Shown: positions 26,038 through 59,100 of the stretch, one piece after another | Position numbering within the stretch: position 1 is the first letter of the stretch | Layout: each line of letters opens with the position of its first letter | Source of the DNA: Mobula hypostoma | Lineage: Eukaryota | Assembly (NCBI RefSeq): GCF_963921235.1 | Contig: NC_086115.1 | Location: 31,806,001-31,870,000, forward strand | Direction: 5' to 3' | Length of the DNA stretch: 64,000 bases | The notes under the pieces: generated by a model | Seen by the model: only the letters and a program-made list of their open reading frames with translations | What the model was told of the DNA's origin: nothing | Database searches by the model: none | Made by a program: the position numbers and the translations under genes

Positions 26038-26212
26038 AACAAGAGAAAATCTGCAGATGCTGGAAACCCAAGCAACGCACACAAAATGCTGGAGGAACTC
26101 AGCAGGCCAGGCAGCATCTTTGGAAACGTCTTGGGCCGAAACGGCGACTATACTTTTTTCCATAGATGCTGTGTGGCCTGCTGAGTTCCTCCAGTATTTT
26201 GTGTACTTTGCT
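26038..26212. mobile_element. Fold-back mini-element made of two inverted Penelope pseudo-LTR tails
   Basis: Arm 26071-26128 is the approximate reverse complement of 26157-26212. Confidence 0.8.
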
Positions 26213-27900: not shown

Positions 27901-27904
27901 AGTT

Positions 27905-29710: not shown

Positions 29711-30000
29711 GGGTTACCATAGTAGTGCAGCGGGTAGTCTGATATTATTACAGGACAGGGTATCAGACTCCAGAGTTCAACTCCAGCGTCATCCATAAGG
29801 AGTCAGTATATACTCCCCACGGAATGTGTGGGTTTTCCCACATGTTCCAATTTCCTCCCACAGTCCAAAGAAATATCTGTTAATAGGCTAACTGTAAAGT
29901 GTCCCATAATTAGGCTAGGGTTGCATTATGGGTTGCTGGATGGTGCGGCTTGAAGGGCCAGAAGGGCCTATTCCGCTCTGCTTCCCAATAAATACATAAA
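29711..30000 (+). mobile_element. Degenerate tRNA-derived SINE with a CR1-like tail
   Basis: A-box-like tagtgcagcggg, B-box-like gagttcaactcc, and ...gaagggcctatt 3' end. Confidence 0.6.
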
Positions 30001-30654
30001 TAATGAGGTGTTTTCCTCGGGTTTTACTTGCACCGGCTGAAATTCAGTCAGCTACCTAGCTAAGCAAGGGATACGATGCACCTACACTGTGCAGTGAAGC
30101 TCTAAGTCCAGTGCTCTTCTTCGCATCTCACAGGTGCTGGGGGCAGGGTAACCACACATTCACTGTCCCTGCAGCAGGTTTCCTCTGGCAATAGAGCAGT
30201 ACAGCACAGGAACAGGCCCTTCAACTCACAATCTTGCGCTGAACTAATGAAATTAGTAATCAAACGCCCAATTAAACTAATCCTTTTGTGCCAAAAGAAT
30301 GCCCATATCTTTCCATTTCCTGCTCAATCATGTGGCCATTTATGAGCCTGTTGAACACTTCTTTCATATTTACTTCTCCCACCACCCCAGGCACCCACTA
30401 TTCTGCTTAAAAAACTTGTCCCATACATCTCCTTTGAACTTACCCCTTCTCACCTTAAATGCAAGTCCTCTGATATTTGATAGTTTCACCCTAGGAAAAA
30501 TATACTGGTTGTCTACTCTATCTATGCCTTTTATAATCTTGTAAATCTCTATCAGATCTCCCCTCAGTCCCTGTTGCTCAGGGAAAGAAGTCAGTTGCAG
30601 GAGAAGATCCAGCCTCTAACGTCTGTACGTCATTGCAACACCTTTTCCATCAGT

Positions 30655-30855
30655 ACACACAAGAGATTCTGCAGATGCTGGAGATCCAGAGTAACAAAAA
30701 ACAAAATGCTAGGAGAACTCAGCAGATCAGGCAGCATCTATGGAGAGGAATGAACAGTCGATGTTTTGGGCTCACACTGTTGAAAGATCTCACCCTGAAA
30801 TATCGACTGTTTGTCCTTCTCCGTAGATGCTGCCTACTTGCTGAGTTCCTCTTCC
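30655..30855. mobile_element. Fold-back Penelope pseudo-LTR mini-element
   Basis: aactcagcagatcaggcagcatctatggagagg..acagtcgat is inverted relative to atcgactgt..ttctccgtagatgctgcctacttgctgagtt. Confidence 0.75.
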
Positions 30856-31594
30856 AATAGCGTGGCACTGGAACGTTAGATCTGGCATTCTGCTGTCACC
30901 TGTTTATGAGTTTGCATTTCTCCGCAATAGTCCAACCTTCTATTTTATTTCTTTGGTATCAAATAGGTGGAAAAGAACATTCCATCTCCCTGACATTTAA
31001 GTCCACTCACAAATGTTACAACTGATGATCTGATTGGCCCTTGATTCTTTTTCCACAACAACATTCCTGACAGAAGTGAATCCGGAGAACACCTGACAAT
31101 CTCCAGATTACGGTGAGCCAAATTAGTTGCGATTTTTTTGAAGTATTTTAATGTAAATGTACAATGAGTTATTTGAAACTTGTTTCAACTTTCAGATACC
31201 AGTTTCACCATAGCAATTTATAAAACAGCTGGATTGCAATGCCATCTGAAGGTTTTCATCGTAGACCGTACTGAGTAACATCTGGCTGAAATTGGTTAAT
31301 GCAATCCAAAAACTGTTAAATCTGACTGAACCATCAATTGCTAATCACCGTTCAATTATGTGGAACAGTCCTGCTGCTAATCACATTAAGGAGAGTTGCA
31401 GCAGCCCAGCACTGACTCAGGAACATTCTGCATATCACAGTGTTATCTTGCATATTCAAGCTACCTCTATTCCTTAGGGAAGGCAGACATTTTGACCCCA
31501 AATACCCATACTAGCCCCTGAAGCACTGCTCATTTGAAGGAATATCAGCCAAAATAGTTCTGTTGATTTGTTTTCTCAACCAATGAAATATAGT

Positions 31595-38406: not shown

Positions 38407-40570
38407 ATAGAAACATAGAAACATAGAAAATAGGTGCAGGAGTAGGCCATTCGGCCCTTCGAGCCTGCACCGCCATTTATTATGATCATGGCTGATCATC
38501 CAACTCAGAACCCCGCCCCAGCCTTCCCTCCACACCCCCTGACCCCTGTAGCCACAAGGGCCATATCTAACTCCCTCTTAAACATAGCCAATGAACTGGC
38601 CTCAACAGTTTGCTGTGGCAGAGAATTCCACAGATTCACCACTCTCTGTGTGAAGAAGTTTTTCCTAATCTCGGTCCTAAAAGGCTTCCCCTCTATCCTC
38701 AAACTGTGACCCCTCGTTCTGGACTTCCCCAACATCGGGAACAATCTTCCTGCATCTAGCCTGTCCAATCCCTTTAGGATCTTATACGTTTCAATCAGAT
38801 CCCCCCTCAATCTTCTAAATTCCAATGAGTACAAGCCCAGTTCATCCAGTCTTTCTTCATATGAAAGTCCTGCCATCCCAGGAATCAATCTGGTGAACCT
38901 TCTTTGTACTCCCTCTATGGCAAAGATGTCTTTCCTCAGATTAGGGGACCAAAACTGCACACAATACTCCAGGTGTGGTCTCACCAAAGCCTTGTACAAC
39001 TGCAGTAGTACCTCCCTGCTCCTGTACTCGAATCCTCTCGCTATAAATGCCAGCATACCATTCACCTTTTTCACCGCCTGCTGTACCTGCATGCCCACTT
39101 TCAATGACTGGTGTATAATGACACCCAGGTCTCGTTGCACCTCCCCTTTTCCTAATCGGCCACCATTCAGATAATAATCTGTTTTCCTATTTTTGCCACC
39201 AAAGTGGATAACTTCACATTTATCCACATTAAATTGCATCTGCCATGAGTTTGCCCACTCACCCAACCTATCCAAGTCACCCTGCATCCTCTTAGCATCC
39301 TCCTCACTGCTAACACTGCCACCCAGCTTCGTGTCATCCGCAAACTTGGAGATGCTGCATTTAATTCCCTCATCCAAGTCATTAATATATATTGTAAACA
39401 ACTGGGGTCCCAGCACTGAGCCTTGCGGTACCCCACTAGTCACTGCCTGCCATTCTGAAAAGGTCCCGTTTATTCCCACTCTTTGCTTCCTGTCTGCTAA
39501 CCAATTCTCCACCCACACCAATACCTTACCCCCAATACCGTGTGCTTTAAGTTTGCACACTAATCTCCTGTGTGGGACCTTCTCAAAAGCCTTTTGAAAA
39601 TCCAAATATACCACATCCACTGGTTCTCCCCTATCCACTCTACTAGTTACATCCTCAAAAAATTCTAAGAGATTCGTCAGACATGATTTTCCTTTCACAA
39701 ATCCATGCTGACTTTGTCGATCATTTCACCGCTTTCCAAATGTGCTGTTATCACATCCTTGATAACTGACTCCAGCAGTTTCCCCACCACCGACGTTAGG
39801 CTAACCGGTCTATAATTCCCCGGTTTCTCTCTCCCTCCTTTTTTAAAAAGTGGGGTTACATTAGCCACCCTCCAATCCTCAGGAACTAGTCCAGAATCTA
39901 ACGAGTTTTGAAAAATTATCACTAATGCATCCACTATTTCTTGGGCTACTTCCTTAAGCACTCTAGGATGCAGACCATCTGGCCCTGGGGATTTATCTGC
40001 CTTCAATCCCTTCAATTTACCTAACACCACTTCCCTACTAACATGTATTTCACTCAGTTCCTCCATCTCACTGGACCCTCTGTCCCTTACTATTTCTGGA
40101 AGATTATTTATGTCCTCCTTAGTGAAGACAGAACCAAAGTAATTATTCAATTGGTCTGCCATGTCCTTGCTCCCCATAATCAATTCACCTGTTTCTGTCT
40201 GCAGGGGACCTACATTTGTCTTTACCAGTCTTTTCCTTTTTACATATCTATAAAAGCTTTTACAGTCCGTTTTTATGTTCTCCGCCAGTTTTCTCTCATA
40301 ATCTTTTTTCCCCTTCCTAATTAAGCCCTTTGTCCTCCTCTGCTGAACTCTGAATTTCTCCCGGTCCTCAGGTGAGCAACTTTCACTGGCTAATTTGTAT
40401 GCTACTTCTTTGGAATTGATACTATCCCTAATTTCTCTTGTCAGCCACGGGTGCACTACCTTCCTTGATTTATTCTTTTGCCAAACTGGGATGAACAATT
40501 GTTGTAGTTCATCCATGCAACCTTTAAATGCTTGCCATTGCATATCCACCGTCAATCCTTTAAGTATCAT
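38407..40570 (-). mobile_element. Young 5'-truncated CR1 LINE; ORF2 (RT) with a single frameshift
   Basis: ORFs 39695-40591 and 38505-39698: KSPGPDG, NYRPVSLTS, YLDFQKAF, GVPQGSVLGP, KFADDTKL; (tttctatg)n tail. Confidence 0.97.
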
Positions 40571-40739
40571 GTGTTGGTCGACATCCAACAATTACTACCA
40601 ATTAGAATTAATTTATTTTCACAGTATATCTGGGATTCTGATTATATTTCATGTATTTCAACTGGAAACAAAAATCACCCAATAAGATCACTTAGATATT
40701 GATATAAATACTCACATCCACTTAATTCTCCACACTCAA

Positions 40740-41169: not shown

Positions 41170-41810
41170 ATCAGTAGGGCGACTAGGACTTGATGTTTCA
41201 ATCCCTATGGTAAGTCGGCACTCTTGATGTTGACAGTGGGCTTGGAGTGGTGACAAGGAGGGAGGATAGGTACGCCATCGAGTTCATCAGGTGGGTACCC
41301 TCCTTCTTTGACATTTCGTTAATAAGCCCACGACGTCTCCAGAGGGCTCAATGGTGCTACCTGGCATCCCAGATACACCCCCCTCAGTTCCACACCAGCC
41401 TGTCGTCATCTTGCAGCCCAGTTGTTGTCTTTCCTTTTAATCCAAATCTAATCGCTGCTTTCTTCTGCTGCATTTGACAAGGACTTGACTGCTTCTTGGA
41501 GGGAGTGACCCCTCACCCCTATCTTCCTCAATAGACTGGTCGTAGATGTAGCAACGAATCCACTGCATCCCACCTCTACAGGGGAAATCTTGGTCTTCCG
41601 GCCATTCTGGGCAGCTTCAGTTGCCAGTTCAGAGTACTTGGTCTATTTCCTCTCATAAGCTTCTTCGACACCATCTTCCCATGGTACTGTCAATTCCACA
41701 ACATATGCCAGCTTGGCTGTTGTGGACCACAAGACCATGTCTGGCTGGAGTGTTGTAACCGCAATGTCCGGGGGAAACACAAGCTTTTTTTTTCCAAGTC
41801 CACGTCCATT
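41170..41810 (-). mobile_element. Non-LTR retrotransposon 3' end with a restriction-like endonuclease (HERO/NeSL-like)
   Basis: TTLQPDMVLWSTTAKLAYVVELTVPWEDGVEEAYERK..KY (PD..E..K REL motif). Confidence 0.82.
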
Positions 41811-41938
41811 TTCCAATCCCAAGCAACCTGTAATAGTGGTCTCTTCCACTGCATGAGAAGGAATTTCTATTTGAATTAGCATCATTCTCCACTTTGGAAC
41901 ATTACAAAGCATTTCACAGCTGAAGTGGTGCCCTTACA

Positions 41939-43260
41939 TGTCACAATGGTGGGCATTGGGAGCAAGGGTGGACCCAAATGCAAGACACATCTTGTGAGGT
42001 TAATTAGATTTAGTTTATTGTTTGATACCAGGACAGCAAAGCAGAAAGAGAAATAGCGAACAGGACAAGGACTACAACTAGGCTGGGACCAAGGGTCTGG
42101 GCTTGGACTCAGAATCGGCTCCCAGAACTAGAAGAGACATGAAGAAGCTAGGGTATGGACTCCGAGCCAGGGACTGGGCAAGGACCCAGTACCTGGGTCT
42201 TGCCTCGGGCTCAGACCCTAGAACCAGGCATGAACATGACATGGACTAGGGAGAGGAGGAACATGGAAAACAGATCCTCTGTCTCGGGAGAGCAGGTACA
42301 TGGAGCCATCGACACATACACAGAACACAGAGTCGGGACCCCTCCTTGGGTACAGGACATAGGGCTGGGACTCACACACAGAACAGAGAGCCGGGACCCC
42401 TCCTTGGGTACAGGACATAGGGCCGGGACTCATGACCCTCGGCGGGGCAACGGCAAGACGGCCTGACTTACCCCACGGAGGCAAGGACAAGACAAACACC
42501 AAAGAACAACACAGTTCCTATCTAGCTCCAGCGATAGAACTAGACCAAGGTGCAGGCGAGGGCTACAGACGAGGGCTAGAGGTGAGAGGGGCAGAGAAGT
42601 GATTCAGACAGGGGGGTAGGACAGGAATCACAGACTGCTATGGCCAGGACTTAACTAGGTACTCGGATGCCACCAGGGCACGGACTTGACTTGATACTCG
42701 GATGCTGCCAGAGCCAGGACTTGACTTGGTACTCGGATGCCGCCGGAGCCAGGACTTGGACGTGGTACTTGGATGCCGCCGGAGCCAGGACTTGGACTTG
42801 GATGTGGTACTTGGATGTCGCCGGAGCCAGGATGTGGTACTTGGAACCTCCGGGTAGAGGTGAGCTCTAGACTCGGCCCAGGAACAGTAGATAGTGGCTC
42901 CTGATTCTCTCCGGCGGGTTAACTGATGGACCCACCTTGATGAGGAAACTTTGCAGGCTCGCTTTGGCGAGGTAACTGGACAGGGTTGCTCCAGTGAGGA
43001 GAGGCGAATTACCGGCACTCGCTTCGGCAGAGACCAGGCTTGCTTCGGCCAGATGACATCGGCACACCGTAGCTTTGACGACTTTGCAGACGCTCCCACA
43101 CTGAACGGCTGAAAGCCGGAGACTATAGACTACCGGTTCAGCCGAGAGCTAATTGCTTCTAACCACCAAAGCCGAGGGGCACGGGAAAACAGGGAATCAA
43201 TGGTCCGGATCGTAACATAAACAAAGTAAATTTAAAGGGACCCCGATCCGGACCATGACA
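41939..43260 (-). mobile_element. Solo LTR of the sushi-like family at 50791-54323
   Basis: TGTCA...TGACA ends; 5-bp TSD TTACA/TTACG with one CpG-type mismatch; reverse complement is colinear with both LTRs of 50791-54323. Confidence 0.92.
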
Positions 43261-44119
43261 TTACGTCCAATTGCTACTGTAAGTTAAAAAACAAAGCTGA
43301 GGACAGAATGCTCCCACAAAATGCTATGAATGGATCGTTTGTGTTAGGACTTGGTTACCAGAAAACCTCAGGAGCTCCTCTGCTGTTCCGAGAATAGTGG
43401 CTTTGAATATTTTAGCTTGAAATTGGATTCCAATGATTTTTGGTGTGTGAAAAGTGTATCGCATTTAACCCTACCAATTGTGAGATCTGCAAAAATAAAA
43501 AATCACAAAATTTCTGAAATTTACAAAAGAAATTATTAGCGCATACTAATGTACCCTGGTTGCAGTATCATATCTGTATTTTTCAGCGTTGCCACGTCAT
43601 TATACTGGTAGAACTGCAACTTGACTCACACTCACTATGGCAGCCAATATAAGACAGGGAAATATGGAGGAAAAGAGGGTAAGTGTTGATACTGTGTCTG
43701 AACACAGTGCTTCCTCTCTCAACCCCATTCTGCTCACACATTCACTTCCATCCCCTAAGTGGTCCCCAGCGACTGTGAGGCTGCATCAAGCAAAGGTCAC
43801 AGCAGAGATTTCTGCAGTGACCAGCCAGAAACTCAGGCAAAAATAAGCAATCTCCTTTGCCTGCACTGCAGAGATCAATAAAGTAGGTACAATCAGACAG
43901 CAGAGCATTAATGTTCCAGCAGAGACATTTTAATTCAAACATAAATTCACTTAGTGCATTTGTTCTTTCTTTCACTTTGACAAAAACAGAGTCATTAGAT
44001 GCACATTTCAAACAAACAATGAGTGTCACGCATATCGATAACAGCATCATGTGGATGAATGTCACTCAGGAACTTATATAACTGTCAACATGAATTGTAC
44101 TGAGAAGTTACATATTGAT

Positions 44120-44700
44120 AGAGGTGTACAAGATGATAGAGGCATAGATCGAGAGAATAGCCAGAGACATTTTTCCCCCCCACAGGGCAGAAATCCTTTT
44201 CTCCTATGGTCCACTCTCCTCTCCTATCAGATTCCTTCTTCTCCAGCCCTTGACCTTTCCCGCCCCTCTGGCTTCACCTGTCACCTTCTAGCTAGCCCCC
44301 TTCCCCTCCCCCTCACCTCTTTATTCTGGCGTTTTCCCCCTTCCTTCTCCGCCTTGAAGAAGGGTCTCAGCCCGAAACGTCGACTGTTTATTCATTTCCA
44401 CAGATGCTGGCTGACCTGCTGAGTTCCTCCAACATTTTGTATATGTTGCTTATAATCTTAAGGTGAATGGAGTAAAGTATAGGGGGAATATCAGAGGTAA
44501 AGTTTTTTTTACACAAAGAGCGATGGGTGCATAGATGTAGATACATTAAGGACATTTAAGAAACTCTTAGATAGGCAAACAGATAACAGAAAAATGGAAG
44601 TCTATGGGGGAGGGAAGGGACAGATTGACCCTAGAGTAGATTAAAAGTTCACACAACATCATGGGCTGAAGTGCCTGTATTATGCAATAGTGTTCTAAAT
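44120..44700 (+). mobile_element. CR1 3' fragment interrupted by a Penelope pseudo-LTR (~44195-44450)
   Basis: CR1 3' sequence on both sides of a tail carrying gaagggtctcagcccgaaacgtcgac. Confidence 0.7.
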
Positions 44701-45555
44701 TCTAAGTGCTCAACCCAATTTCCCGGTGTGAGGGATCTAAAAATGGGGCAAAAAAATTATTTTAACCAAATTTTATGCAGAAAAAGACCACAAAAGAATG
44801 CAATTTCTAAGCATCCTACTTGCAATTAGTGAACAGATATTACCCTGATTTGACAGCCCATCCACAAGAAGACTGTCAAAGCAGTGATCATTCAATGCTG
44901 CACAGACATGCCAGTCTGAAGATGTGCTGGAGTGGGGATTGAGCCCTCAATCTACCTATTCAGAGGGAAAAGTGTTATCAACTGTCTTGTTCTCAAATTA
45001 AAATCCTCTGGATGAAGAACTTTATGCATAAAGGGCAAGCCTTCCTATCAAGATACAGGCTTCTGGGTTTTTCTATAACAGAACTAACCTCCAGCTGATA
45101 GGCTGTCATTTTAATCTGGCATAATTTTGAAGCAAATCCAATTGGTTTAAGCAATTAAGCAAGCAGAAATGTTAGCACCTGACTGGGCAAAAATAATAAT
45201 GGGTTCTATTTATTTCCCTCCCAATCACAACAGCCGGCTGGTGTTGACACCTGGTAATAATCAGAAATTGCATTTTGACCTGACTGAATGCTGCATTCAT
45301 TAGCATTTTAACACACAAGCTCTGATATCAAAGAGAATCGGCTCCACAGAGCAATTCATAGCTTGTTACTCACTGACAGAGGGAATGCCTCTCCACTTTC
45401 TACTTATTGGGAAAAACATAATTTTCCAATTTAGACTCCATCCAGTTGAAGTTATACAATATCATGCGTGATAAATTCAAGAACAGCTCAGATACAGTCT
45501 CAGGATCATCCATAAGACTCTTGCGTCAGGAAATTCTATATTGAATTAGCTTAAA

Positions 45556-45683
45556 CTGTTCTGATGAAGGGTCTCAGTCCGAAACGTCAACTGTTTACTC
45601 TTTTCCATGGATGCTGCCTGGCCTACTGAGTAAATTTGTGCGTGTTAATTTGGATTTTCAGCATCTGCAGGTTTTCTCTTATC
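45556..45683 (+). mobile_element. 128-bp Penelope pseudo-LTR insert starting at a hammerhead motif (45558-45591)
   Basis: gtt-CTGATGA-agggtctcagtcc-GAAA-cgtc^aac; 9-bp TSD TAGCTTAAA at 45547-45555 and 45684-45692. Confidence 0.8.
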
Positions 45684-46222
45684 TAGCTTAAAATATAGTT
45701 AGCACACAGAAACATCCGCGCGTACTGTGTATATCTTGTTGGAAGCACATCAGATGTAGGATCTTAAAAGTGGAATGCTTATACTATTGGATAGAATAGT
45801 AATTATTGTAGTTAAGGTAAGAAATGTAATAGCTGTACCAGCATGCATTTAAAAATCACATAACAACCAAAGTAATTGAGAGGAGACTAGTCTTTTAAAT
45901 CAAGCTACAGTATACAATCCCCGAGCTGACAGATTTAATGCTGAGGATGTTAAGAAAAATCATGGAAGTTAGAATGTGTATGTATAATTCAATATGGCCT
46001 GATTCACCATAGAAGTCTAATAGCTTTGAATGGTGAGGCATTTAGTATCCCACTAAAACCCACATAGATTTTATTAAGCATAATTTTTTGCTGTGTAAGC
46101 CTGCATTAATAAGTCTATGATGGCTGACATTCAATAGTTACAAATCTTTTGTATTTGAGGATTACAAATCTTTTGGATTTGAGGATTAGGGTACCAAACC
46201 CCTTGAAGAGGAACATTAATAC

Positions 46223-46313
46223 CTCGTCCGGATGGTTATTCATGCATTCGCCCGTGTACTTGTCGTTCTTTTGTAAAGGCAGGCTGAACAAACACTTGGT
46301 GTGGTGAGACTTG
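46223..46313 (-). other. Candidate 91-nt exon
   Basis: Acceptor ttatttatttgtAG, donor GAG|GTATTA; only one open frame, KSHHTKCLFSLPLQKNDKYTGECMNNHPDE; CpG-richer than its flanks. Confidence 0.35.
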
Positions 46314-46854
46314 CTACAAATAAATAAGGTAATTTATTTTACAGCAAGGTAAAGCACAGAGAAGCAATCATGGTAATGCAAACTTGTAAAACATCCTCTT
46401 TGCTCAGCAATAATGAAAAATTAAAAACTAAATCATTTTTACTTAAATAAACACTTATTAATTTGTCGTCAGCGTTTCTAATTACTTTCTTTCCTGAATT
46501 TTTTGCTCATCACAAGAAATATACATGAAATACTTAATATTTTGTTTTGACAGAAGTTCTCATGGCTTTTCCAGTAACAATGATTGCCTCACAGAGCCCA
46601 ATAGCTGCAGTACCACCCTTTACATTCAAGTGTCTCCAAACTCAACAAACAACAATACAGAATTAGTTTAATAGAGTGGCATTTTTCTGTATTCTCAAGG
46701 ATGCTTTTGAAATAAAATCACACTGTTGGTAAACAGCTTTTTGATACATAGGCAAGTGATTAAAAATCCTATATGATCACATCATTCATAAAATCCAACT
46801 TCTAGTGTTGTCAGAAAGACCAGCTCCTTGAAATCAAACTAATGGTCTTGTCAG

Positions 46855-47365
46855 CTTCTTGATGTGGAAAGTCCAACTATCTGTCATCTGGGAACTGAAT
46901 GGTCATTCTCCCTCTCAGTTATCACTCCGATATATCACATATACTGTATATGGGGTGTGAGAGGTTGCAGCTTCTCTGAGTATCTGAAGCCGCTGCTCCT
47001 CACGTTTTGGCTGCTCTTCAGCCCCACGCTCCTGATCTTCGGTCACGTAGTGTGGAGGGAGGTGGGTCAGTCGGGAGATCTCCTGGTTGGTGTGTCCCTT
47101 GCCCGGCCAAGGAGCCCATTGATGGGTCTAGGCAACAGGCCAAGATGGTCCTACCTGAGCCAACTATCTGCCCCTCTTCCGGGATTATGTCTATGCTTAA
47201 GTGTCCCGGGAGAGGGGGCACTTCAAGGGCCCAAGTACGTTCTAGATCATGATAGCAATGTTACAATTTGAAACTGTAAACCGTGCGCATCATGTACAAT
47301 TGTAATATTGTATTCCTATGATATTGTAAATACTGAATAAGTCACCTTTGAAAAAGGAAAAAATA
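46855..47365 (+). mobile_element. Tx1/L1-like LINE 3' fragment
   Basis: Degenerate zinc knuckle and FSPTLLIFGH..DLLVG motif; A-rich tail. Confidence 0.6.
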
Positions 47366-48514
47366 AGGTCTCAAACCCATTATGAACAAGAAAACCTGCA
47401 GATGCAGAAAATCCAAATTAACACACACACAATGCTGGAGGAACTCAGCAGGCTAGGCAGCATCTATGGTAAAAAGAAAAGAGTCAACATTTTTGGCCAA
47501 CACCCTTCATCAGGACTCTAACCTTTTAGTTTAATTTCTAGAATAAATCTGAATTGCCCTAAATATTTTAAACTCCAAGTTATGAAAAAATCTAATCTTG
47601 TATTTTCTATAAGGTCCACAAAGGTGGATGCCATCTCACAGAGTAGTTTTATTTAATTGTTCACCCATCTCTTGTGTGATCTATATTTTACTACTAATTG
47701 TGGAACTCAGTTCCACTGATGGAGCATTTGGCAAGGAAAGTAAAGCTGCCAGGCACCCAGTTCAGTTCTGTTTATGGAACCTAACACTATCTATTTATCA
47801 ATCACTTCAGAAAGCTGAACCAGTTCTATCAGATTGTACGGCTACATCCCTCCAACAAATAAAGCTCTTATGTGATCTTAAGTCTGGGTATTACAGCCAA
47901 AAATATCTCCTTGTATGGTGGGGGGGCAAAATAATATTTTGTGAAAATATTGCATAGCCTTACTATTGCCTCCCTTTTAATAGACTGATATATTCAATAT
48001 GACTCCTGACCATATTTATCCCAGATACATTCTCTCATACATAACGCTTCACTTTAAAGCCAGTTATGAATGCTCACTCTTAAGTCATCCTGCCTGCAAG
48101 ATATCTGAAGCCCATAAAAATATGTGGGCTGCTTTTTTTTAAAATCAGAGAGAGGGGTTGGTTTGGGCGAGGAAGCCCCTTAAATTATTGTACGAGTGTG
48201 CTGCTCGGGGGGGGGGGCGGTGGAGGTGACACATGAATGGCAACATTCCTATTGATTTTAGGGAATGTAATAGAACATTGTTGAAACCATTGACTATGAA
48301 TATAGTCGCTACACAGTTTATTTTTGTAAATAACTGTTATTATATTAAAAAATGTACTCTACGTGATCATGAGCATAACCACAATAAATTGCAATGGAAG
48401 CCAGTTTGTAAGCAATCTTGTGCCAACTCCCAACTCTTTCTAACTGCAGCCTATTTTTACTCTTGTAAATTTCTCATTCTATCAGATAGCTGAAAATACA
48501 ATAAATGCAGTCAG

Positions 48515-48990
48515 ATCACAAACAAGAGAAAACCTGCAGATGCTGGAAAGCCAAGCAACATGCTGGAGGAACTCAGCAGGCCAGGCAGCATCTATGGAAA
48601 AGAGTAAACAGTCGACTTTTCCGCCGAGACCCTTCATCAGGGCTGGAGGGAGAAAAGATGAATAGTCAGAGCTAGAAGGTGGGGGGAAGGAAGGAAGAAA
48701 CAAGGTGAGCAGTGAAACTGGGGGGGAGGGGTGAAGTAAAGAGCTGGGAAGTTGAGAGGTGATCGAGATTTAGGGCTGGAGAAGGGGGAATCTGATAGGA
48801 GAGGACAAAAGGCCATGTAAGAGGGAGGTGATGTACAGGTAAGGACAAGGTGAGAGAGGTCATGGGAATGGGGAATGGTGAGGAGTGGAGGGGCATTACC
48901 GGAAGTTCGAGAAATCGATGTTCGTGCCATCAGGTTGGGAGCTACCCAGACAGAATACAAGGTGTTGTTCCTCAAACCTAAGCGTGGCTG
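48515..48990 (-). mobile_element. Penelope-like 3' fragment with a degenerate hammerhead (48610-48644)
   Basis: GIY-YIG end plus pseudo-LTR. Confidence 0.85.
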
Positions 48991-50921
48991 GCAAATGAAA
49001 GAAAACAAAGGGAAAATGGGCCATCAAACCTGGGATGTCCCACCTGTGACTGCATTCCGTCATGAAGCTAGTCTACTGGATCTACATGATGTTCATCTTT
49101 CTTTTGCTGATCTGTCATTTCACCCATTGTTGAGCCTCATTTTCATGCAGTTCTTCACAAGGTAATCAAAAGATTTTAGAAACACAAGTAAGTTATATCT
49201 TCTCACACTCAGTTAGCTGATGAACAAGTTATCTCAAATGAATTCTTGCAATGAATCATTATCCTAAGCTCCCAGTTGTCAGCAATTAAGACCATAAGAT
49301 ATAGGAACAGAAGTAGGCTATTTGGCCCATCAAGTCTTCTCTGCCATTCAGTCATGGGCTGATCCAATTCTTCCAGTCAACCCCACTCCCCTGCCTTCTC
49401 CCCATACCCTTTGATGCCCTGGCTAATCAAGAACATATCTATCTGCCTTAAATACACCCAATGACTTGGCATCCACAGCCGCTCGTGGCAACAAGTTTCA
49501 CAAATTTACCACCCTCTGACTAAAGTAATTTCTCCGCATCTCTGTTCTAAATGGACATCCTTCAACCCTGAAGTTGTTCCCTCTTGTCCTAAACTCCCCT
49601 GCCATGGGAAATAACTTTGCCATATCTAATCTGTTCAGGCCTTTTAACATTTGGAATGTTTCTATGAGATCCCCCCCTTCATTCTCCTGAACTCCAGGGA
49701 ATACAGCCCAAGATCTGTCAGACATTCCTCATACGGTAACTCTTTCATTCCAGGCATCATTTTCATGAATCTTCTCTGAACCCTTTCCAATGTCAGTATA
49801 CCTTTCTAAAATAAGGAGCCCAAAACTGCACACAATACTCCAAGTGTGGTTTCATGAGTGCCTTAGAGAGCCTCAAATCACATCCCGGCTCTTATATTCT
49901 ATACCTCCAGAAATGAAAGCCAACATTGCATTCGCCTTCTTCACCACTGACTCAATCTGGAGGTTAACATTTAGGATACCCTGCACAAGGATTCCCAAGT
50001 CCCTTTGCATCTCTGCATTTTGAATTCTCTCCCCATCTAAATAATAGTCTGCCCGTTTATTTCTTCCACGAAAGTGCATGACTATACACTTCCTAACATT
50101 GTACTTCATTTGCCACTTCTTTGCCCATTCCCCTAAACGATCTAAGTCTCTCTGCAGGCTCTCTGTTTCCTCAACACTACCCGCTCCTCCACCTATCTTT
50201 GTATCATCCGCAAACATAGCCACAAATCCACTAATCCCATAGTCCACATCATTGACATATATCGTAAAAAGCAGTGATCCCAACACCGACCCCTGTGGAA
50301 CTCCATTGGTAACCAGCAGCCAGCCAGAGTAAGATCCCTTTATTCCCACTCTCTGTTTTTTGCCAATCAGCCAATGCTCCACCTATGCTAGTAACTCCCC
50401 TGTAATTCCATGGGCTCTTATCTTGCTAAGCAGCCTCATGTGCTGCACCTTGCCAAAGGCCTTCTGAAAATCCAAGTACACCATATTTCCTGCATCTCCT
50501 TTGTCTACTCTGCTTGTAATTTCCTCAAAAAATTGCAGTAGGTTAGTCAGGCAGGATTTTCCTTTCAGGAAACCATGCTGGCTTTGGCCTATCTTGTCAC
50601 ATGCCTCCAGATACCCCATAACCTCATCCCTAATAATCAATTCCAACAACTTCCCAACCACTGATTTCAGGCTAGCAGGTCTTTATTTCCCTTTCTGCTG
50701 CCTCCCATCCTTCTTAAATAGTGGAGTAACATTTGCAATTTTCCAGTCATCCGGTACAATGACAGAATCTACTAATTCTTTAAAGATCATTGTCATGGTC
50801 CGGATTGGAGTCCCTTTAAATTTAGCTTGTTTATGTTATGATCCGGACCGTTGATTCCCTGTTTTCCCGTGTCCCTCGACTTTGGTGATTAGAGGCAATT
50901 AACACTCGGCTGAACCAGTAG

Positions 50922-50961
50922 TTTATAGTCTCCGGCTTTCAGCCGTTCGGTGCGGGAGCAT
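50922..50961 (+). promoter_or_regulatory. Putative LTR TATA box (50922-50927) and transcript start complementary to the PBS
   Basis: tttata followed ~25 nt later by gcgggagcat, which is 9/10 complementary to acgctcccgc at 52686-52695. Confidence 0.6.
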
Positions 50962-51022
50962 CTGCAAAGTCATCAAAAGCACGGTGTGCCGATGTCATCT
51001 GGCCGGAGCAAGCCTAGTCTCT

Positions 51023-51248
51023 GCCGAAGCGAGTGCCGGTAATTCGTCCTTCCTCACCGGAGCAACCCTGTCCAATTACCTCGCCGAAGCGAGTGCCGGT
51101 AATTCATCCTTCCTCACCGGAGCAACCCTGTCCAATTACCTCGCCGAAGCGAGTGCCGGTAATTCGTCCTTCCTCACCGGAGCAACCCTGTCCAATTACC
51201 TCGCCGAAGCGAGTGCCGGTAATTCGTCCTTCCTCACCGGAGCAACCC
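51023..51248. repeat. 60-bp tandem array (~3.8 copies) in the 5' LTR
   Basis: gccgaagcgagtgccggtaattcgtccttcctcaccggagcaaccctgtccaattacctc. Confidence 0.95.
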
Positions 51249-51624
51249 AAAGCGAGCCTGCGAAGTTTCCTCGTCACGGTGGGTCCGCCGCTGTCCACTG
51301 TTCCCGGGTCGAGTCGAGAGCTCGTCACTACCCAGAGACTCCAAGTCAAGTCCTGGCCCCGGTGGCATTCAAGCACCAAGTCAAGTCCTGTCCCTGGCAG
51401 CATTCTAGCACCAAGTCAAGTCCTGGCCCTGGCGGCTTCCCAGTTCTGAGTCAAATCCTGGCCCTGGCGGTCTGTGACTCCTGTCCTACCCCCTTGTCTG
51501 AATCCCTTCTCTGCCTCTCTCACCTCTAGCCCTCATCTGCAGCCCCCGCCTGCACTTCGGCCTAGTTCCATCACCGGAGGTAGATAGGTACTGTCTGGTG
51601 TTCATTTGTGTTGGTCTTGTCTTG

Positions 51625-52182
51625 TTTTGTACTCGCCTCCATGGGGTAAGTCAGGCCGTCTTGCCGTTGCCCTGCGGGGAGTCATGTCTTGTCTTGTCTT
51701 GTCTTCACCTCCGTGGAGTAAGTCAGGCCGTCTTGTCGTTGCTCCGTGGGGGGTCATGTCTTGTCGTGTCTTGTCCTCGCCTCTGTGGGGTAAGTCAGGC
51801 CATCTTGCCGTTGCTCCGCGGGGGGTCATGTCTTGTCTTGTCTGGTCCTCGCCTCCGTGGGGGTAAGTCTGGCCATCTTGCCATTGCCCCGCGGGGGGTC
51901 ATGTCTTGTCCTCGCCTCCGTGGGGTAGGTCAGGCCGTCTTGCCGTTGCCCCGCGGGGGGTCATGTTCTGTCTTGTCTTGTCCTCGCCTCCGTGGGGTAA
52001 GTCAGGCCATCTTGCCGTTGCTCCGCGGGGGGTCATGTCTTGTCGTGTCTTGTCCTCGCCTCCGTGGGGTAGGTCAGGCCGTCTTGCCGTTGCCCCGTGG
52101 GGGGTCATGTTCTGTCTTGTCTTGTCCTTGCCTCCGTGGAGTAAGTCAGGCCGTCTTGCCGTTGCCCCGCGGGGGGTCATGA
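51625..52182. repeat. ~65-bp tandem array (~8-9 copies) in the 5' LTR
   Basis: ctcgcctccgtggggtaagtcaggccgtcttgccgttgccccgcggggggtcatgtcttgtcttgt-like unit. Confidence 0.92.
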
Positions 52183-53261
52183 GTCCCAGCCCTATGTCCT
52201 GTGCCCAAGGAGTGGTCCCGGCTCTCTGTTCTGTGTGTGAGTCCCGGCCCTATGTCCTGTACCCAAGAAGGGGTCCCGACTTCTGTGTTCTGTGTATGTG
52301 TCCATGGTTCCATGTACCTGCTCCCGAGACCGAGGCTCTGTATTCCCATGTTCCTCCTCTCCCTACCCCATGTCATGTCTTTGCCTGGTCCTGGGGTCCG
52401 AGCCCGAGGCAAGACCCAGGTACAGGATCCTTGCCCAGTCTCTGGCTCGGAGTCCATACCCTAACCTCTTCATGTCTCCTCTAGTTCTGGGAGCCGATTC
52501 TGAGTCCAAGCCCAGACCCTTGGTCCCAGCCTAGTCGTAGTCCTGAGTCCTTGTCCAGTTTGCTATTTCCTGCTCCTGCCTTGCCCTCCTGGTATTGAAC
52601 AATAAACTAAATCGAAGTAACCTTACAATATGTGTTTTGCATTTGGGTCCACCTTTGCTCCCAATGCCCCTGCCATTGTGACAGAACGCTCCCGCCAAAC
52701 ATGGACCCAGCAGACACAAACTGTTTTTCCGAACACTTGTCAGCCTGAAAGTCAAGATGTTGTTCTGTTTTGCCCGCTGGCCAAATCCCACCTGGGTCAT
52801 CGATAATACAGGCAAATCTGTTGGTCGCCTGGAGGCTCCCATTGGGAGGAGGGTACTGTCATGGTCCGGATTGGGGTCCCTTTAAATTTAGCTTGTTTAT
52901 GTTCCAATCTGGACCCTTGATTCCCTGTTTTCCCGTGTCCCTCGACTTTGGTGATTAGAGGCAATTAACACTCGGCTGAACCAGTAGTTTATAGTCTCTG
53001 GCTTTCAGCCGTTCGGTGCGGGAGCATCTGCAAAGTCATCAAAGGCACAGTGTGCCGATGTCATCTGGCCGGAGCAAGCCTAGTCTCTGCCGAAGCGAGT
53101 GCCGGTAATTCGCCCTTCCTCACCGGAGCAACCCTCGCCGAAGCGAGCCTGCAAAGTTTCCTCGTCACGGTGGATCCCTCAGTTAACCCGCCGGAGAGAA
53201 TCAGGAGCCGCTGTCTACTGTTCCTGGGTCGAGTCGAGAGCTCGTCACTACCCAGAGCTCG

Positions 53262-53460
53262 AAGTCAAGTCCTGGCCCTGGCGGCATTCTAGCACCAAGT
53301 CAAGTCCTGGCCCTGGCGGCATTCAAGCACCAAGTCAAGTCCTGGCCCTGGCGGCATTCAAGCACCAAGTCAAGTCCTGGCCCTGGTGACATTCAAGCAC
53401 CAAGTCAAGTCCTTGCACTGGCGGCTTCCCAGTTCTGAGTCAAGTCCTGGCCCTGGCGGT
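53262..53460. repeat. ~31-36-bp tandem array in the 3' LTR
   Basis: caagtcaagtcctggccctggcggcattcaagcac repeated ~5-6 times. Confidence 0.9.
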
Positions 53461-56400
53461 CTGTGATTCCTGTCCTACCTCCCGTCTGAATTCCTTCTCT
53501 GCCCCTCTCGCCTCTAGCCCTCGTCTGCAGCCCCTGCCTGCACTTCGGTCTAGTTCCATCGCCAGAGCTAGATAGGTACTGTCTGGTGTTCATTCGTGTT
53601 GGTCTTGTCTTGTTTTGTACTCGCTTCCATGGGGTAAGTCAGGCCGTCTTGCCGTTGCCCTGCGGGGAGTCATGTCTTGTCTTGTCTTGTCTTGTCTTCA
53701 CCTCCGTGGAGTAAGTCAGTCCGTCTTGCCGTTGCTCCGTGGGGGGTCATGTCTTGTCGTGTCTTGTCCTCGCCTCCGTGGGGTAGGTCAGGCCGTCTTG
53801 CCGTTGCCCCGCGGAGGGTCATGAGTCCCGGCCCTATGTCCTGTACCCAAGGAGGGGTCCCGGCTCTCTGTTCTGTGTGTGAGTCCCGGCCCTATATCCT
53901 GTACCCAAGGAGGGGTCCCGACTCTGTGTTCTGTGTACGTGTCCATGGTTCCATGTACCTACTCCCCAAGACCGAGGCTCTGTTTTCCATGTTCCTCCTC
54001 TCCTTAGCCCATGTCATGTCCTTGCCTGGTCCTGGGGTCCGAGCCCGAGGCAAGATCCAGGTACTGGGTCCTTGCCCAGTCTCTGGCTCAGAGTCCATAC
54101 CCTAGCCTCTTCATGTCTCCTCTAGTTTTGGGAGCCGATTCTGAGCCCTAGCCCAGACCCTTGGTCCCAGCCTAGTCATAGCCCTGAGTCCTTGTCCAGG
54201 TCGATATTTCCTGCTCCTGCCTTGCTCTCCTGGTATCGAACAATAAACTAAATCGAAGTAACCTCACAAGATGTGTCTTGCATTTGGGTCCACCCGCGTC
54301 CAATTGCCCCCGTCATTGTGACAATCATTGTCAATGCAATCTCTCCAGCTACTTCCTTCGGAACCCAAGGTGCATTGCGTCAAGTCCAGGAGATTTATCC
54401 ACCTCGGACGATTAAGCTTCCTGAGCACCTTCTCAGTCGTAATTTTCACTGCACATACTTCACTTCCTTGACACTCCTGAATGTCCGGTATAGTGCAGGT
54501 GTCTGCAACTGTGAAGACTGATGCAAAATACACATTCAGTTCCTCTGCCATCTCTGCATCTCTCATTACAATATCTGCAGCATCATTTTCTATTGGCCCT
54601 ATATCTACCCTCAACTCTCTTTCACCCTTTATATACTTAAAAAAGCTTTTAGTATCTTCTTTGATATTAGTCGCCAGGTTCCTTTCATAAATCATCTTTT
54701 CCTTCCTAATGATCTTCATAGTTTTCTTCTGCAAATTTCTAAAAGCTTCCCAATCCTCCATCTTCTCACTAGCTTTGACTTCATTGTATGCCCTCTTTTT
54801 TGCTTTTACTTTGGCTCTGACTTCACTTGTCAGCCACAGTAGTGTCCTTCTTCCATTCGAAAATTTCTTCTTATTTGGAATATATCTGTCTTGCACTTCC
54901 CTCATTCTTCCCAGAAACTCCAGCCATTGCTACTCTACTGTCCTACCTGCTAGTGTCCCTTTCCAGTCAACATTGGCCAGTTCCCCTCTCATACCATTGT
55001 AATTTCCTTTATTCCACTGAAATACCGACACATTGGAATTTAGTTTCTCTTTCTCAAATTTCCAAGTGAACTCAATCATATTGTGACCTCTGTTCCCTAA
55101 GGGTTCCTTAACCTTAAGCTCTCTTATCACCTCCGGATCATTACACAACACCCAATCCAGCATAGCTGATCCCCTAGTGGGCTCAACAACAAGCTGTTCT
55201 AAAAAGCCATCCCTTAGACATTCTACAAATTCTCTCTCTTGAGGTCCAGTACTGGCCTGGTTTTCCCAATCCACTTTCATGTTAAAATCTCCAATGATTA
55301 TCATGACATTGACCTTCTGACACACCTTTTCTATCTCTTGCTGTAACATGTAATCCACATCCCAGCTGCTGTTTGGAGGCCTGCTTGGGCAGAGTCTCCC
55401 CAATATTTCATGAGTATATCCCTCCCCACTACTGGAAGTATCTACAGGAAGCACTGCCTCAAGAAGGCAACATCTTTTAACAGAGATCCCCACATTATGG
55501 CCATGTCATCTTCTTACAGCTCTCTTTGGGCAGGTTCAGGAACAGCTATTTCCCTTCCACAATTCAGTATTTGAACCAACCAGCAAAACCCTTTTCACTA
55601 CAGTTTAACGATACTATGATCACATTGATCACTTTTCAGTAAAATAGACTTTGATTTGTTTGTCATTGTAATTGTGTTCTTACTTATAAAGACTGTTAAA
55701 TTAACTTTTTCTTGTGAATGTTGCTTATACGATGCTATGTATCTATGATGCTGCTACAAGTATTGGTGCATACATGTACTTGTCTGTATGACAATGAACT
55801 GTTTATAAACCATAAACAGTTTGGAGCTGGGGAGGAAAGGAAGGTGGTAGCTCTTTGTGTGGAAGAGGAAGGCTGCACATTGAAGTGGAACTTGAGAAGT
55901 AAGACACTAAAGCCTGTCATTTTCATAATTCTACAATTGTCCATTCACAATCAATGGAATAGTTACAGCATAGAAGGAAACTTTCTCTGCCCAATGAAGC
56001 AGTGGAGGCTACCTCAGTAAATATACTTAAGACAAGGCTGGATAGATTTTTTGCATAGTAGGGGAATTAAGGGTTATGAGGAAAAAGCAGGTAAGTGGAG
56101 ATGAGTCCATGGCCAGATCAGCCTTGATGTAATTGAATGGTGGAGCAGGCTCAACGGGCCAAATGGTCTACTCCTGCTCCTATTTCTTGTGTTCTTATGT
56201 CCAGTCCATGCCACTTCTATGTAAGGGTAATCCCTCTGGTACTGAAAAATCTTTCCTTTTGTATACTTATTCCATTCATTTTGAAAGCTATAATTGAATA
56301 AGCTTTCATTATTAATGCTGATAGAGCAGTCCACAAACTGGCCGTTAACTGTGTAAAAATACTTTTCCTCTAGGTGTTTTTCTAATCATTTTTATTCTAT

Positions 56401-57139
56401 GTCCCTAGCTTTTGGCTCCTCTGTCAACAGGAATAGAACACATTTCTGTAACATGCTTGAAAATTCATCCCTTTGCCTACTTGGTAAGTTAGAATATAAA
56501 GGCATAGGATGATAGGTCCTCGATCGTTCCAGCTACACATATTTTTAATTGACCATTTAAATATAAAGGACTTATCAATATTATAATAGTTTATTTGATT
56601 ACTGCTGTAGAACCTTTGTTTTTTTAAGTAGGATTATTAAAGCTGAGATCACTTTTAATCACCAGAATTTTCCACTCATGTACCAATTTATGCTTGTGTC
56701 TTGATATTTGACACAGGATGTCTCACCGTACAGCACACTATGGGTGCTTTGCATATTTCCATGCAGACCTATATAAATTTACAACATGGTCAAACTAACA
56801 CTTTTTAAGATTGATCATAAGACATAGGAACAGAATTAGGCCATTCAGCCCAACAAATCCGCTCCACCATTCCATCATGGCTGATTTATTATCCCTCTCA
56901 ACCCCATTGTCCTGCCTTCCCCCTGTAACCTTTGACACCCTGCCTAATCAAGAACCTATCGAACTCCACTTTAAATATACTCAATGTCCTAGCCTCCACA
57001 ATGGATTCCAGATTCACTATCCTCAGTTTAAAGAAATCCCTTCTCATCCCTGTTCTAAGTAGGCATCCCTCTAGTCTGAGGCTCTTCCCTCTGCTCCACA
57101 AGACTCGCCCGTTATAGGAAACATCGTCCCTATATCCAC

Positions 57140-57245
57140 CCAGGCTCTGGCACACAACCGCGATAGATGGAACAGACTGGTGCAAAGCTTGTCATGACGG
57201 TGCCCTGACGACTCCACCAGGAGTTAAGGGCTCAAGGAAGGAAGG
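57140..57245 (+). mobile_element. Extreme 3' end of an RTE-like LINE inserted in a CR1 fragment (56815-57350, -)
   Basis: QALAHNRDRWNRLVQSLS*, (GGAA)n tail, TSD ATATCCAC at 57132-57139 and 57246-57253. Confidence 0.7.
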
Positions 57246-57779
57246 ATATCCACTCCTCCTAGTCCTTTCAATATCCAATAGGTTTCAGTGACCTCTTCCC
57301 CTCATACTTCTAAACTCCAGCAAGTACAGAGCCATCAAACACTTCTCATACTTGTTTTAAACAACTCATATTGTTAGCACGTTAAAATCACTAGCTTCAA
57401 GTGAAGAGGTTATTGTTAGTACACACCACTGTACAGATTTTAACCACTGTATTAAAGCCTTTTTTAAAGGCCTTGCACACTGATTGGTTGTACCCAGGCA
57501 ATTAAATAAATAAGGCAACAATCAGAAGTAACAATAGAAATTACTGGAAGCCCTCAACAGGTCAGGCAGCATATACAGATATGTATCTGCAGCTATTGCC
57601 TATTTTCTACTTTTTCCTAGTTCTGATGACAGATCATGACCTGAAATGTGCACTGCTCATTCTACAGATTCTGCCTGAACTATTCTCCAGGCATTTCCAG
57701 TTTCTAAGCATTTGCATTTTTTGCTTGCTTTTAGAACAATAAGTCATATATTCAAATTCTGGATCACTAATCTTGACAC

Positions 57780-59100
57780 CCTGACTACAGATCTAGCTCT
57801 CAGCAGACTACGAATTTCCTACTTTGTTCACAGCTTTTGGTTTGCGTATGTCCAGTATGTTCTCGAAGGCACACACTCATTCACACAGGTCTTGATGAAG
57901 TCAGTGACAACTGTGACATATTCAATCAGATTTTAATATTGTCCAGTTCAGAGACTCAGTGCAGTCCTGTAAGTGCTCCTCAAACTTTCTGGACCATATT
58001 TCTTGGTCATCATCACTGGTGCTGCTGTCTTTAGACTCTGCCTATACACCAAGAGTAGAAGTGCAGCCAGGTGATTGGACTTTCTCAAATGTAGATCTGG
58101 GTGTGGAACAGCATGGTAAGCATTCTTGACAATGATATAACAGCAATCAAATGTGTTGGCTCCTCTGTTTCGCTCGGTGATATGTTGTTAGTAGCTGTTC
58201 AGAGACTGCTTCAAGCTGGCCTACTGAAATCCACCAGAACGATAGGGAAGGCATCAGGCTGTGCTGCTTTATGACTGCTGTTGATGGTGCTCAGCTCCTC
58301 CAGAGCCTGTCTGACATTAGCCTGAGGTGAAAAGCAGCATCCATCATCAATGTCCTCACCACCCAGGCCATGCTCTTTTCTCGCTGCTGCCATCAGGTAG
58401 AAGGTACAAGTGCCTCAGGACTCGTACTACAAGGTTCAAGAGCAGTCACTACTCCTCAAACATCAGGCTCTTGAACAACAGGGGATAACTACACTCATTC
58501 TATTTCAACAGTTACTGTTCTCTAGATTTGCTAAGTATGCCCACAGGAAAAAGAATTTCAGGGTTGTATGTGGTGACATGTATGTACACTAATAATAAAT
58601 TTGACCTTGAACTTCAAATGTACACCACTATAAGGATGATGGTGGAAAACTCCCTCAGCAGATAAAATGAATGACACTTGATCGCTAGATGTTCCAGGAA
58701 GACTGAGACAGGACTGCCACGTCTGTGCACCATAATGAGTTATCATAAAGCATAGTCCACCTCCTCTACCTTTAAAAGACTCAGATGTCTTGTCATTGCA
58801 GAGAATGATGAAGCCATTGGGCTAGAGCACTACATCCAAAATACCAGGTGTGAGCCATATTTCTGTACAGCAAAATACACAGCAGTCCCTGATGTCCCTC
58901 TGGTAATGCAATCTTGTTCTGGGGTCTTCAGTTCTATTTTCCAGACAGGATACATTTGCTAACAGGATAGACAGGAGTAGGGATCTAAAACATCTGTGTT
59001 TCAATCGTAGCTGCAGATCAGTTTGGCTTCCACTTCTGTTTTCTTAAAGGGAAAGTGTACTCACGATCCACATCTGTTGCCCAGGATCCGCTGGTATCGC
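57780..59100 (-). mobile_element. Rex1/Babar-like LINE 5' region (endonuclease), degenerate
   Basis: SILLANVSCLENR..YQRDIRDCCVFCCTEIWL; TVVTDFIKTCV; an opposite-strand 3' tail is inserted at ~58330-58610. Confidence 0.75.

What the first reader, a model, noticed from the sequence alone, without database searches (positions are those of the whole stretch)
50791..54323. LTR element that is 95% LTR: two 1.5-1.9 kb LTRs around a 173-bp core
Seen: two TGTCA..TGACA LTRs, a perfect ATCAT TSD, a PPT, and an internal region holding only a PBS-like segment, the first codons of gag (MDPAD..stop) and a pol-end-like relic. Known: TRIMs have short LTRs and LARDs have long internal regions, so this architecture fits neither class. 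Inference: this is a non-autonomous sushi-clade parasite that kept only its cis signals and was mobilised in trans, or a single copy deleted after insertion.
Basis: partly seen in the sequence, partly recalled or inferred. Interest (0 to 1): 0.75.

Follow-up and report, generated by a model that had tools for sequence, protein, structure and literature searches.

The report
Gene-less LTR retrotransposon, almost all LTR
This is an old, dead, protein-less copy of a very abundant jumping-element family of ray genomes, with two long repeat ends around a 173-base middle; the same short middle occurs in many copies and in related species, so it is a known kind of genomic parasite.

Summary
Two direct LTRs lie at 50791-52683 (1893 bp) and 52857-54323 (1467 bp). 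Both start TGTCA and end TGACA. A perfect 5-bp duplication (ATCAT) flanks them, and a 173-bp interior (52684-52856) ends in a purine tract. LTRs make up 95.1% of the element. The 426-bp length difference comes mainly from three minisatellite arrays inside the LTRs.

The element sits inside a LINE on the minus strand. A solo LTR of the same family lies at 41939-43260. The element encodes no recognisable protein.

Public contigs of three related species show that the LTR is present in very many copies. The 173-bp core is also multi-copy, at roughly 3-11% of the depth of the LTR edges. Its majority letters differ from this copy. Contigs in another species span LTR end, core and LTR start. The short interior is therefore a family trait, not a deletion private to this locus.

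The LTRs are 93.7% identical, so this insertion is old.

Priming by Tf1/sushi-type self-pairing is plausible but not shown. No autonomous partner was found.

TRIM and LARD size limits are ends of a published continuum, so the architecture is not a new class. First-stage notes on other pieces of this genome describe similar elements.

The parts
50786..50790 (+). left target-site duplication ATCAT
   Evidence: identical to 54324-54328
50791..52683 (+). 5' LTR, 1893 bp, TGTCA..TGACA
50922..50928 (+). the only TATA-like motif of the LTR (TTTATAG); probable core promoter
   Evidence: same place in the 3' LTR (52988) and as TCTATAG in the solo LTR
50952..50959 (+). GCGGGAGC, complementary to 52688-52695; predicted start of R if the element self-primes
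   Evidence: 30 nt after the TATA-like motif; best RNA duplex of all LTR windows with the post-LTR 20-mer (-20.1 kcal/mol)
51023..51248 (+). 60-bp minisatellite, 3.8 copies (about 1 in the 3' LTR and in the solo LTR)
   Evidence: loose ends at 51093 and 53133 show other copies with fewer units
51341..51470 (+). 35-bp minisatellite, 3.7 copies (5.7 in the 3' LTR, 53262-53459)
51614..52181 (+). 72-bp minisatellite, 8 copies (3 in the 3' LTR, 53602-53823)
52601..52606 (+). AATAAA polyadenylation signal, 83 nt from the LTR end (also at 54242-54247)
52684..52856 (+). 173-bp interior (core)
   Evidence: multi-copy in public contigs
52684..52696 (+). primer-binding-site position; no TGG start and no tRNA complement; 8 nt pair with 50952-50959
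52701..52748 (+). 15-codon ORF MDPADTNCFSEHLSA then stop; possible remnant of a gag start (untested)
52844..52853 (+). polypurine tract GGGAGGAGGG, 3 nt before the 3' LTR
52857..54323 (+). 3' LTR, 1467 bp
54324..54328 (+). right target-site duplication ATCAT
41939..43260 (-). solo LTR of the same family (1322 bp, 83-90% identical), flanked by CGTAA and TGTAA
49873..55493 (-). host LINE copy split by the insertion (endonuclease ORF 54930-55493, RT ORF 49873-50382)
   Evidence: a paralogue at 39460-40321 is colinear across the insertion site; contigs join 50788 to 54335

Best explanation
This is one old, inactive copy of a high-copy, protein-less (non-autonomous) LTR retrotransposon family of ray genomes. 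Its interior is reduced to about 170-190 bp. That interior holds only the signals needed in cis: a primer site just after the 5' LTR, a short leader, and a polypurine tract just before the 3' LTR. Transcription would start about 160 nt into the 5' LTR, after the TATA-like box. It would end after the AATAAA about 80 nt before the end of the 3' LTR, so the RNA would be mostly a kilobase-long R region carrying three minisatellites. Gag, reverse transcriptase and integrase would come in trans from an autonomous Ty3/gypsy element, probably of the Tf1/sushi type. Minus-strand synthesis would probably be primed by the RNA's own 5' end pairing with the primer site rather than by a tRNA. Integrase inserted this copy into a LINE and made the 5-bp duplication ATCAT. 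Since then the LTRs have drifted apart by 6% and changed their minisatellite copy numbers. Shown here: the anatomy, the lack of coding capacity, the multi-copy and multi-species presence of the short interior, and the insertion into a LINE. Inferred: the transcript ends, self-priming, trans-mobilisation, and the clade of the helper.
For: Anatomy and the target-site duplication. No Pfam domain in any ORF or frame of the element, no Rfam family, no tRNA gene.

Contigs laid on the stretch number 34,053, 26,414 and 3,409 from runs of three organisms. Summed depth over the core bin 52696-52826 is 2445, 877 and 14.3. The LTR-edge bins beside it read 41,603-58,703, 21,052-31,468 and 126-172. At core positions 52731, 52735, 52757 and 52778, between 2 and 18 distinct contigs per run carry a letter different from this copy. 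A TGT insertion behind 52757 is seen in all three organisms. These contigs therefore come from other copies.

One 289-nt contig of organism C covers 52618-52886, which is LTR end, whole core and LTR start. A contig of organism A covers 52725-52880.

A solo LTR with its own flanking duplication lies in the same window. Insertion into a LINE is shown.

LTR layout fits the published sushi LTR model, with the promoter near the 5' end and AATAAA near the 3' end (PMC3601003). The primer site's best partner anywhere in the LTR lies 30 nt after the only TATA-like motif. About 74% of contig depth in organism A reads G at 50960, which would lengthen the pairing from 8 to 10 nt (table 3).
Against: No second full copy with a different target-site duplication was read, because contigs are shorter than the LTRs. 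Retrotransposition of the short form is therefore inferred from copy number, not seen.

Summed contig depth is not a copy number.

The 8-nt complementarity alone is not significant: 23% of shuffled 20-mers match the LTR as well.

No autonomous partner was found. No start or end of an RNA was mapped. The one run guessed to be RNA holds LTR pieces, but it may be DNA.
Confidence: 0.7

Rival explanations
1. A single autonomous element inserted here and later lost its interior through a deletion private to this locus.
For: Only one complete copy is in the window. The LTRs are 6% diverged, which leaves ample time for a deletion.
Against: The core and its junctions occur in many distinct contigs with other letters, in three organisms. 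Contigs in another organism span LTR-core-LTR.
Confidence: 0.08
2. The short form is multi-copy because of DNA-level duplication, not because the short RNA was reverse-transcribed. The routes would be tandem LTR-core-LTR arrays from unequal recombination, or segmental duplication.
For: Tandem arrays of LTR and interior are common for TRIM-type elements (PMC6934838). Unchecked first-stage notes on this genome mention three- and four-LTR arrays with interiors of about 160-180 bp. Reads could not show flanks of other copies.
Against: This copy is a simple two-LTR element with a perfect 5-bp duplication inside a LINE, which is the signature of one integration event. The solo LTR has its own duplication. 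The core variants are diverged and shared across species.
Confidence: 0.15
3. Assembly artefact: a longer interior was collapsed between two LTRs.
For: Long LTRs with minisatellites are hard to assemble. No long reads could be laid.
Against: Independent short-read contigs from other samples and species carry the same LTR end-core-LTR start joins. There is no N in the window.
Confidence: 0.03

Closest known systems
TRIM (terminal-repeat retrotransposons in miniature) and 'long-TRIM' non-autonomous LTR retrotransposons
   Same: Non-coding. The interior is reduced to a primer site and a polypurine tract. High copy number with many solo repeats, and dependence on a helper element. Sugar beet families with LTRs of 2.1 kb or more have relatively short interiors (PMC13570524).
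   Different: Classical TRIMs are under 1 kb, have 100-250-bp repeats and a tRNA-type primer site (PMC6934838). Here the LTRs are 1.5-1.9 kb, the element is 3.5 kb, the host is a cartilaginous fish, and there is no tRNA-type primer site.
LARD (large retrotransposon derivatives)
   Same: Non-autonomous and non-coding, with long LTRs.
   Different: LARDs are over 4 kb with a long non-coding interior (PMC13570524). Here the interior is 173 bp.
Tf1/sushi group of Ty3/gypsy elements (self-primed reverse transcription)
   Same: No tRNA-type primer site. The bases after the 5' LTR pair with a site about 30 nt after the LTR's TATA-like box. [quoted passage not shown] The LTR has its promoter near the 5' end and AATAAA near the 3' end, as in the sushi LTR model (PMC3601003).
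   Different: No gag or pol to place in a tree. Only 8 contiguous pairs in this copy. The transcript start is not mapped. The LTR is about three times the mean length (572 bp) of the LTRs used to build the sushi model, because of minisatellites.

Membership tests
LTR retrotransposon (structural definition) | Two direct long terminal repeats ending TG..CA | tested here: met
   50791-52683 and 52857-54323, TGTCA..TGACA, 93.7% identical outside the repeat arrays
LTR retrotransposon (structural definition) | 4-6-bp target-site duplication | tested here: met
   ATCAT on both sides
LTR retrotransposon (structural definition) | Polypurine tract next to the 3' LTR | tested here: met
   GGGAGGAGGG at 52844-52853
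LTR retrotransposon (structural definition) | tRNA-complementary primer-binding site next to the 5' LTR | tested here: not met
   The interior starts GAACGCTCCCGCC with no TGG start. ARAGORN finds no tRNA gene in the window to compare with. Comparison with common tRNA 3' ends was made from memory only.
Non-autonomous LTR retrotransposon (broad sense of PMC13570524) | No coding capacity for gag or pol | tested here: met
   No Pfam hit above cut-off in any ORF or core frame. The longest ORFs are translations of minisatellites.
Non-autonomous LTR retrotransposon (broad sense of PMC13570524) | The same defective structure in several copies | tested here: met
   The core is multi-copy with variant letters in three organisms, and contigs span LTR-core-LTR. 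Flanks of other copies were not seen.
Non-autonomous LTR retrotransposon (broad sense of PMC13570524) | An autonomous partner with related LTR or interior | tested here: inconclusive
   None in the window. The protein searches and metagenome scans found nothing usable. The source genome could not be searched.
TRIM (classical) | Total length under 1 kb and terminal repeats of 100-250 bp | tested here: not met
   3533 bp; LTRs of 1893 and 1467 bp; definition from PMC6934838
LARD | Over 4 kb with a long non-coding interior | tested here: not met
   3.5 kb with a 173-bp interior; definition from PMC13570524
Tf1/sushi self-priming group | The 5' end of the RNA is complementary to the primer site (11 nt in Tf1) | tested here: inconclusive
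   8 exact pairs (50952-50959 with 52688-52695). This is the best duplex of the whole LTR and lies 30 nt after the TATA-like box. Length alone is not significant (23% of shuffles), and the transcript start is unmapped.
Tf1/sushi self-priming group | Pol or RT phylogeny within the sushi/chromovirus clade | not testable with these tools
   The element has no pol.

The most novel reading that the evidence does not exclude
Rays may carry a successful vertebrate 'long-TRIM' lineage. Its RNA would be almost entirely a repeat-laden R region of 1.3 kb or more. It would replicate by Tf1-type self-priming with only about 170 nt of unique interior. That would define the minimal cis requirements of sushi-type retrotransposition in a vertebrate, and the cores would outnumber their autonomous helper by far.
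Probability: 0.3. Interest if true: 0.45.

Novelty: new member of a known kind. Interest (0 to 1): 0.27.

Why it matters
The finding has modest weight. It documents that cartilaginous-fish genomes hold non-autonomous LTR elements stripped to their cis signals, with long LTRs expanded by minisatellites. The family's solo LTRs and complete copies appear in thousands of short contigs per run.

Such families matter for repeat annotation, because size-based TRIM and LARD filters miss them. They also matter for dating insertions, and for asking which sequences a sushi-type helper needs in cis. The finding does not change the picture of how LTR elements work.

Tried and rejected
1. Exact look-up of ten ORFs of the element and its flank in the protein collection found none on record.

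2. A word-based protein search used the 103-aa minus-strand ORF that spans the core and the LTR end, hoping to fetch other copies. Two candidates came back and none was significant.

3. Two metagenome scans, one with a 20-nt core pattern and one with a 34-nt LTR-start pattern, gave 0 hits, as expected for vertebrate DNA.

4. An exhaustive HMMER search used the 37-aa open frame across the polypurine tract into the LTR (52807-52917), hoping to hit a Pol C-terminus that runs into the same LTR. The three hits (P0001-P0003) are translations of unrelated tandem repeats, not Pol. They were rejected.

5. Rfam and tRNA scans, run to test a small-RNA-derived LTR of the Cassandra or Helenus type, found nothing.

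6. A global MAFFT alignment of the LTRs gave a misleading 88% identity because the minisatellites misalign. It was replaced by block-wise alignment.

7. A literature search for ray and stingray repeat descriptions returned nothing relevant.

Majority letters are quoted only as observations from the read table.
Full report
**Observation**

The repeat finder, the raw sequence and a script agree on the anatomy.
- The 5' LTR is 50791-52683 (1893 bp).
- The interior is 52684-52856 (173 bp).
- The 3' LTR is 52857-54323 (1467 bp).
- Both LTRs begin TGTCATG and end TGTGACA.
- ATCAT stands immediately outside on both sides.
- LTRs make up 95.1% of the 3533 bp.

The 426-bp length difference is mostly explained by three minisatellites inside the LTRs:
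- a 60-bp unit, 3.8 copies against about 1;
- a 35-bp unit, 3.7 copies against 5.7;
- a 72-bp unit, 8 copies against 3.

A global alignment is misled by these arrays and gives 88%. Block-wise alignment of the three non-repeat segments gives 93.7% identity over 874 positions. K2P is 0.066, or 0.041 without CpG-type transitions. This is therefore an old insertion. Under an assumed neutral rate of 0.5-2 x 10^-9 per site per year it would be some 16-66 million years old. That figure is an inference only.

**Context**

The element lies inside a LINE on the minus strand.
- An ORF with an AP-type endonuclease domain lies above it (54930-55493).
- An ORF with a reverse-transcriptase domain lies below it (49873-50382).
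- A paralogous LINE copy at 38505-40591 is colinear with both flanks. Its spacing across the insertion site is 339 bp, against 318 bp here once the element is removed.
- Public contigs join 50788 to 54335 directly. These are LINE paralogues without the insert (tables 5 and 5c).

A third LTR of the family lies on the minus strand at 41939-43260. It is 1322 bp long and 83-90% identical. No purine tract precedes it and no interior follows it. It is flanked by CGTAA and TGTAA, a 5-bp duplication with one CpG-type change, so it is a solo LTR.

**Coding capacity**

There is none.
- The long ORFs are translations of the minisatellites.
- No ORF or frame of the core reaches a Pfam cut-off.
- No Rfam family matches.
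- ARAGORN finds no tRNA gene in the window.

**Is the short interior private to this locus?**

Contigs of four public runs were laid on 50600-54500 at 85% likeness. Three runs are DNA runs of three organisms. One is a run guessed to be RNA.

- The LTR is extremely abundant: 34,053, 26,414, 3,409 and 1,532 contigs were laid.
- The core bin (52696-52826) has summed depth 2445, 877, 14.3 and 6.2.
- The LTR-edge bins on either side read 41,603-58,703, 21,052-31,468, 126-172 and 219-241. The core is thus at roughly 3-11% of the LTR edges.
- At 52731, 52735, 52757 and 52778, most of the depth in each of the three DNA runs carries a letter different from this copy. Between 2 and 18 distinct contigs per run show this.
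- A TGT insertion behind 52757 is seen in all three organisms. These contigs therefore come from other copies.
- In organism C, two contigs extend at least 114-140 nt on both sides of the core positions. One 289-nt contig covers 52618-52886, which is LTR end, whole core and LTR start.
- In organism A, a contig covers 52725-52880.

The LTR-short core-LTR form is thus repeated within genomes and shared among related species. Most LTRs are solo or adjoin something else.

If the lowest contig depths are taken as roughly single-copy, the core would number in the order of 10^2 and the LTR 10^3-10^4 per genome. Summed contig depth is not a copy number, so this is a rough guess.

The contigs cannot show the outer flanks of other copies. 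Different target-site duplications, the direct proof of retrotransposition of the short form, remain unseen.

**How it probably works**

The LTR has a single TATA-like motif (TTTATAG, 50922) and a single AATAAA (52601), 83 nt from its end. This layout, with the promoter near the 5' end and the poly(A) signal near the 3' end, is what the published LTR model describes for the sushi clade (PMC3601003). It makes R most of the LTR.

The interior does not start with a tRNA-type TGG site. Instead, GCTCCCGC (52688-52695) is complementary to GCGGGAGC at 50952-50959, which lies 30 nt after the TATA-like box.
- This is the longest exact match of the post-LTR 20-mer in all three LTR copies.
- It is also the best RNA duplex of all 25-nt windows of the LTR: -20.1 kcal/mol, or -25.8 with wider context.
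- An 8-mer alone is not significant. In 23% of shuffles the 20-mer matches the LTR as well or better.
- The position is what counts. In addition, about 74% of contig depth in organism A reads G at 50960 (table 3), which would extend the pairing to 10 nt.

[quoted passage not shown] I therefore rate self-priming as plausible and unproven.

The purine tract GGGAGGAGGG, 3 nt before the 3' LTR, would prime the plus strand. Proteins must come from a helper, because the element encodes none.

**The core's origin**

The ATG at 52701 has a good context (CAAACATGG) and opens a 15-codon ORF. The frames near the 3' end read ...RWPNPTWV... and ...SPGGSHWEEGTVM... These resemble, from memory only, the ends of fish Tf2-like Pol proteins.

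An exhaustive search with the 37-aa frame that runs into the LTR returned only translations of unrelated tandem repeats. The 'gag start' and 'pol end' readings stay open.

**Comparison with known kinds**

By the classical limits the element is neither of the two textbook classes. A TRIM is under 1 kb with 100-250-bp repeats (PMC6934838). A LARD is over 4 kb with a long interior (PMC13570524).

The same 2026 survey of 115 non-autonomous families in sugar beet makes three relevant points:
- these names mark the ends of a continuum;
- no term exists for 1.5-4 kb;
- relatively short interiors are particularly evident in families with LTRs of 2.1 kb or more.

The element is therefore a new member of a known kind, in a less studied host, and more extreme than most: total length over summed LTR length is 1.05.

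First-stage notes of this scan on other pieces of the same genome describe similar elements:
- 'LTR-172 bp-LTR mini-retroelement' (s1-143387);
- 'Giant-LTR, TRIM-like' (s1-143140);
- three- and four-LTR arrays with interiors of about 160-180 bp (s1-143273, s1-144610);
- gene-less self-priming relics (s1-142544, s1-142555).

I could not read those loci. They are leads that agree with the read evidence, not support for it.

**Verdict**

The family reading is supported, and the private-deletion and artefact readings are disfavoured. The helper, the clade and the priming mode remain inferred. The copy itself is old and dead. Interest is low to moderate.

Noticed in passing
window 41939-43260 (-): Solo LTR of the same family, 1322 bp. 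It has one 72-bp unit and one 60-bp unit, and is flanked by CGTAA and TGTAA, a 5-bp duplication with one CpG-type change.
   Followed up: yes
window 38505-40591 (-) and 49873-55493 (-): Two decayed copies of one LINE family, about 70% identical, with endonuclease and RT ORFs. The second copy is the one split by the LTR element. Public contigs show this LINE is even more abundant than the LTR (edge bins).
   Followed up: partly
window 53170-53208: A segment of about 35 bp (..CAGTTAACCCGCCGGAGAGAATCAGGAGC..) is present in the 3' LTR and in the solo LTR but missing from the 5' LTR. The 5' LTR has both lost sequence and gained 60-bp and 72-bp units since insertion.
   Followed up: partly
window 50600-54500, run X10: A run guessed to be RNA holds many LTR pieces (1,532 contigs), but the core is at depth of only about 6. 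This could mean transcription of LTRs, or it could be DNA in the library. It was not resolved.
   Followed up: no
proteins P0001-P0003: The protein library holds 'proteins' that are plain translations of tandem DNA repeats. They can give E-values as low as 5e-18 to short queries from repeat-rich DNA, which is a trap for searches of this kind.
   Followed up: yes
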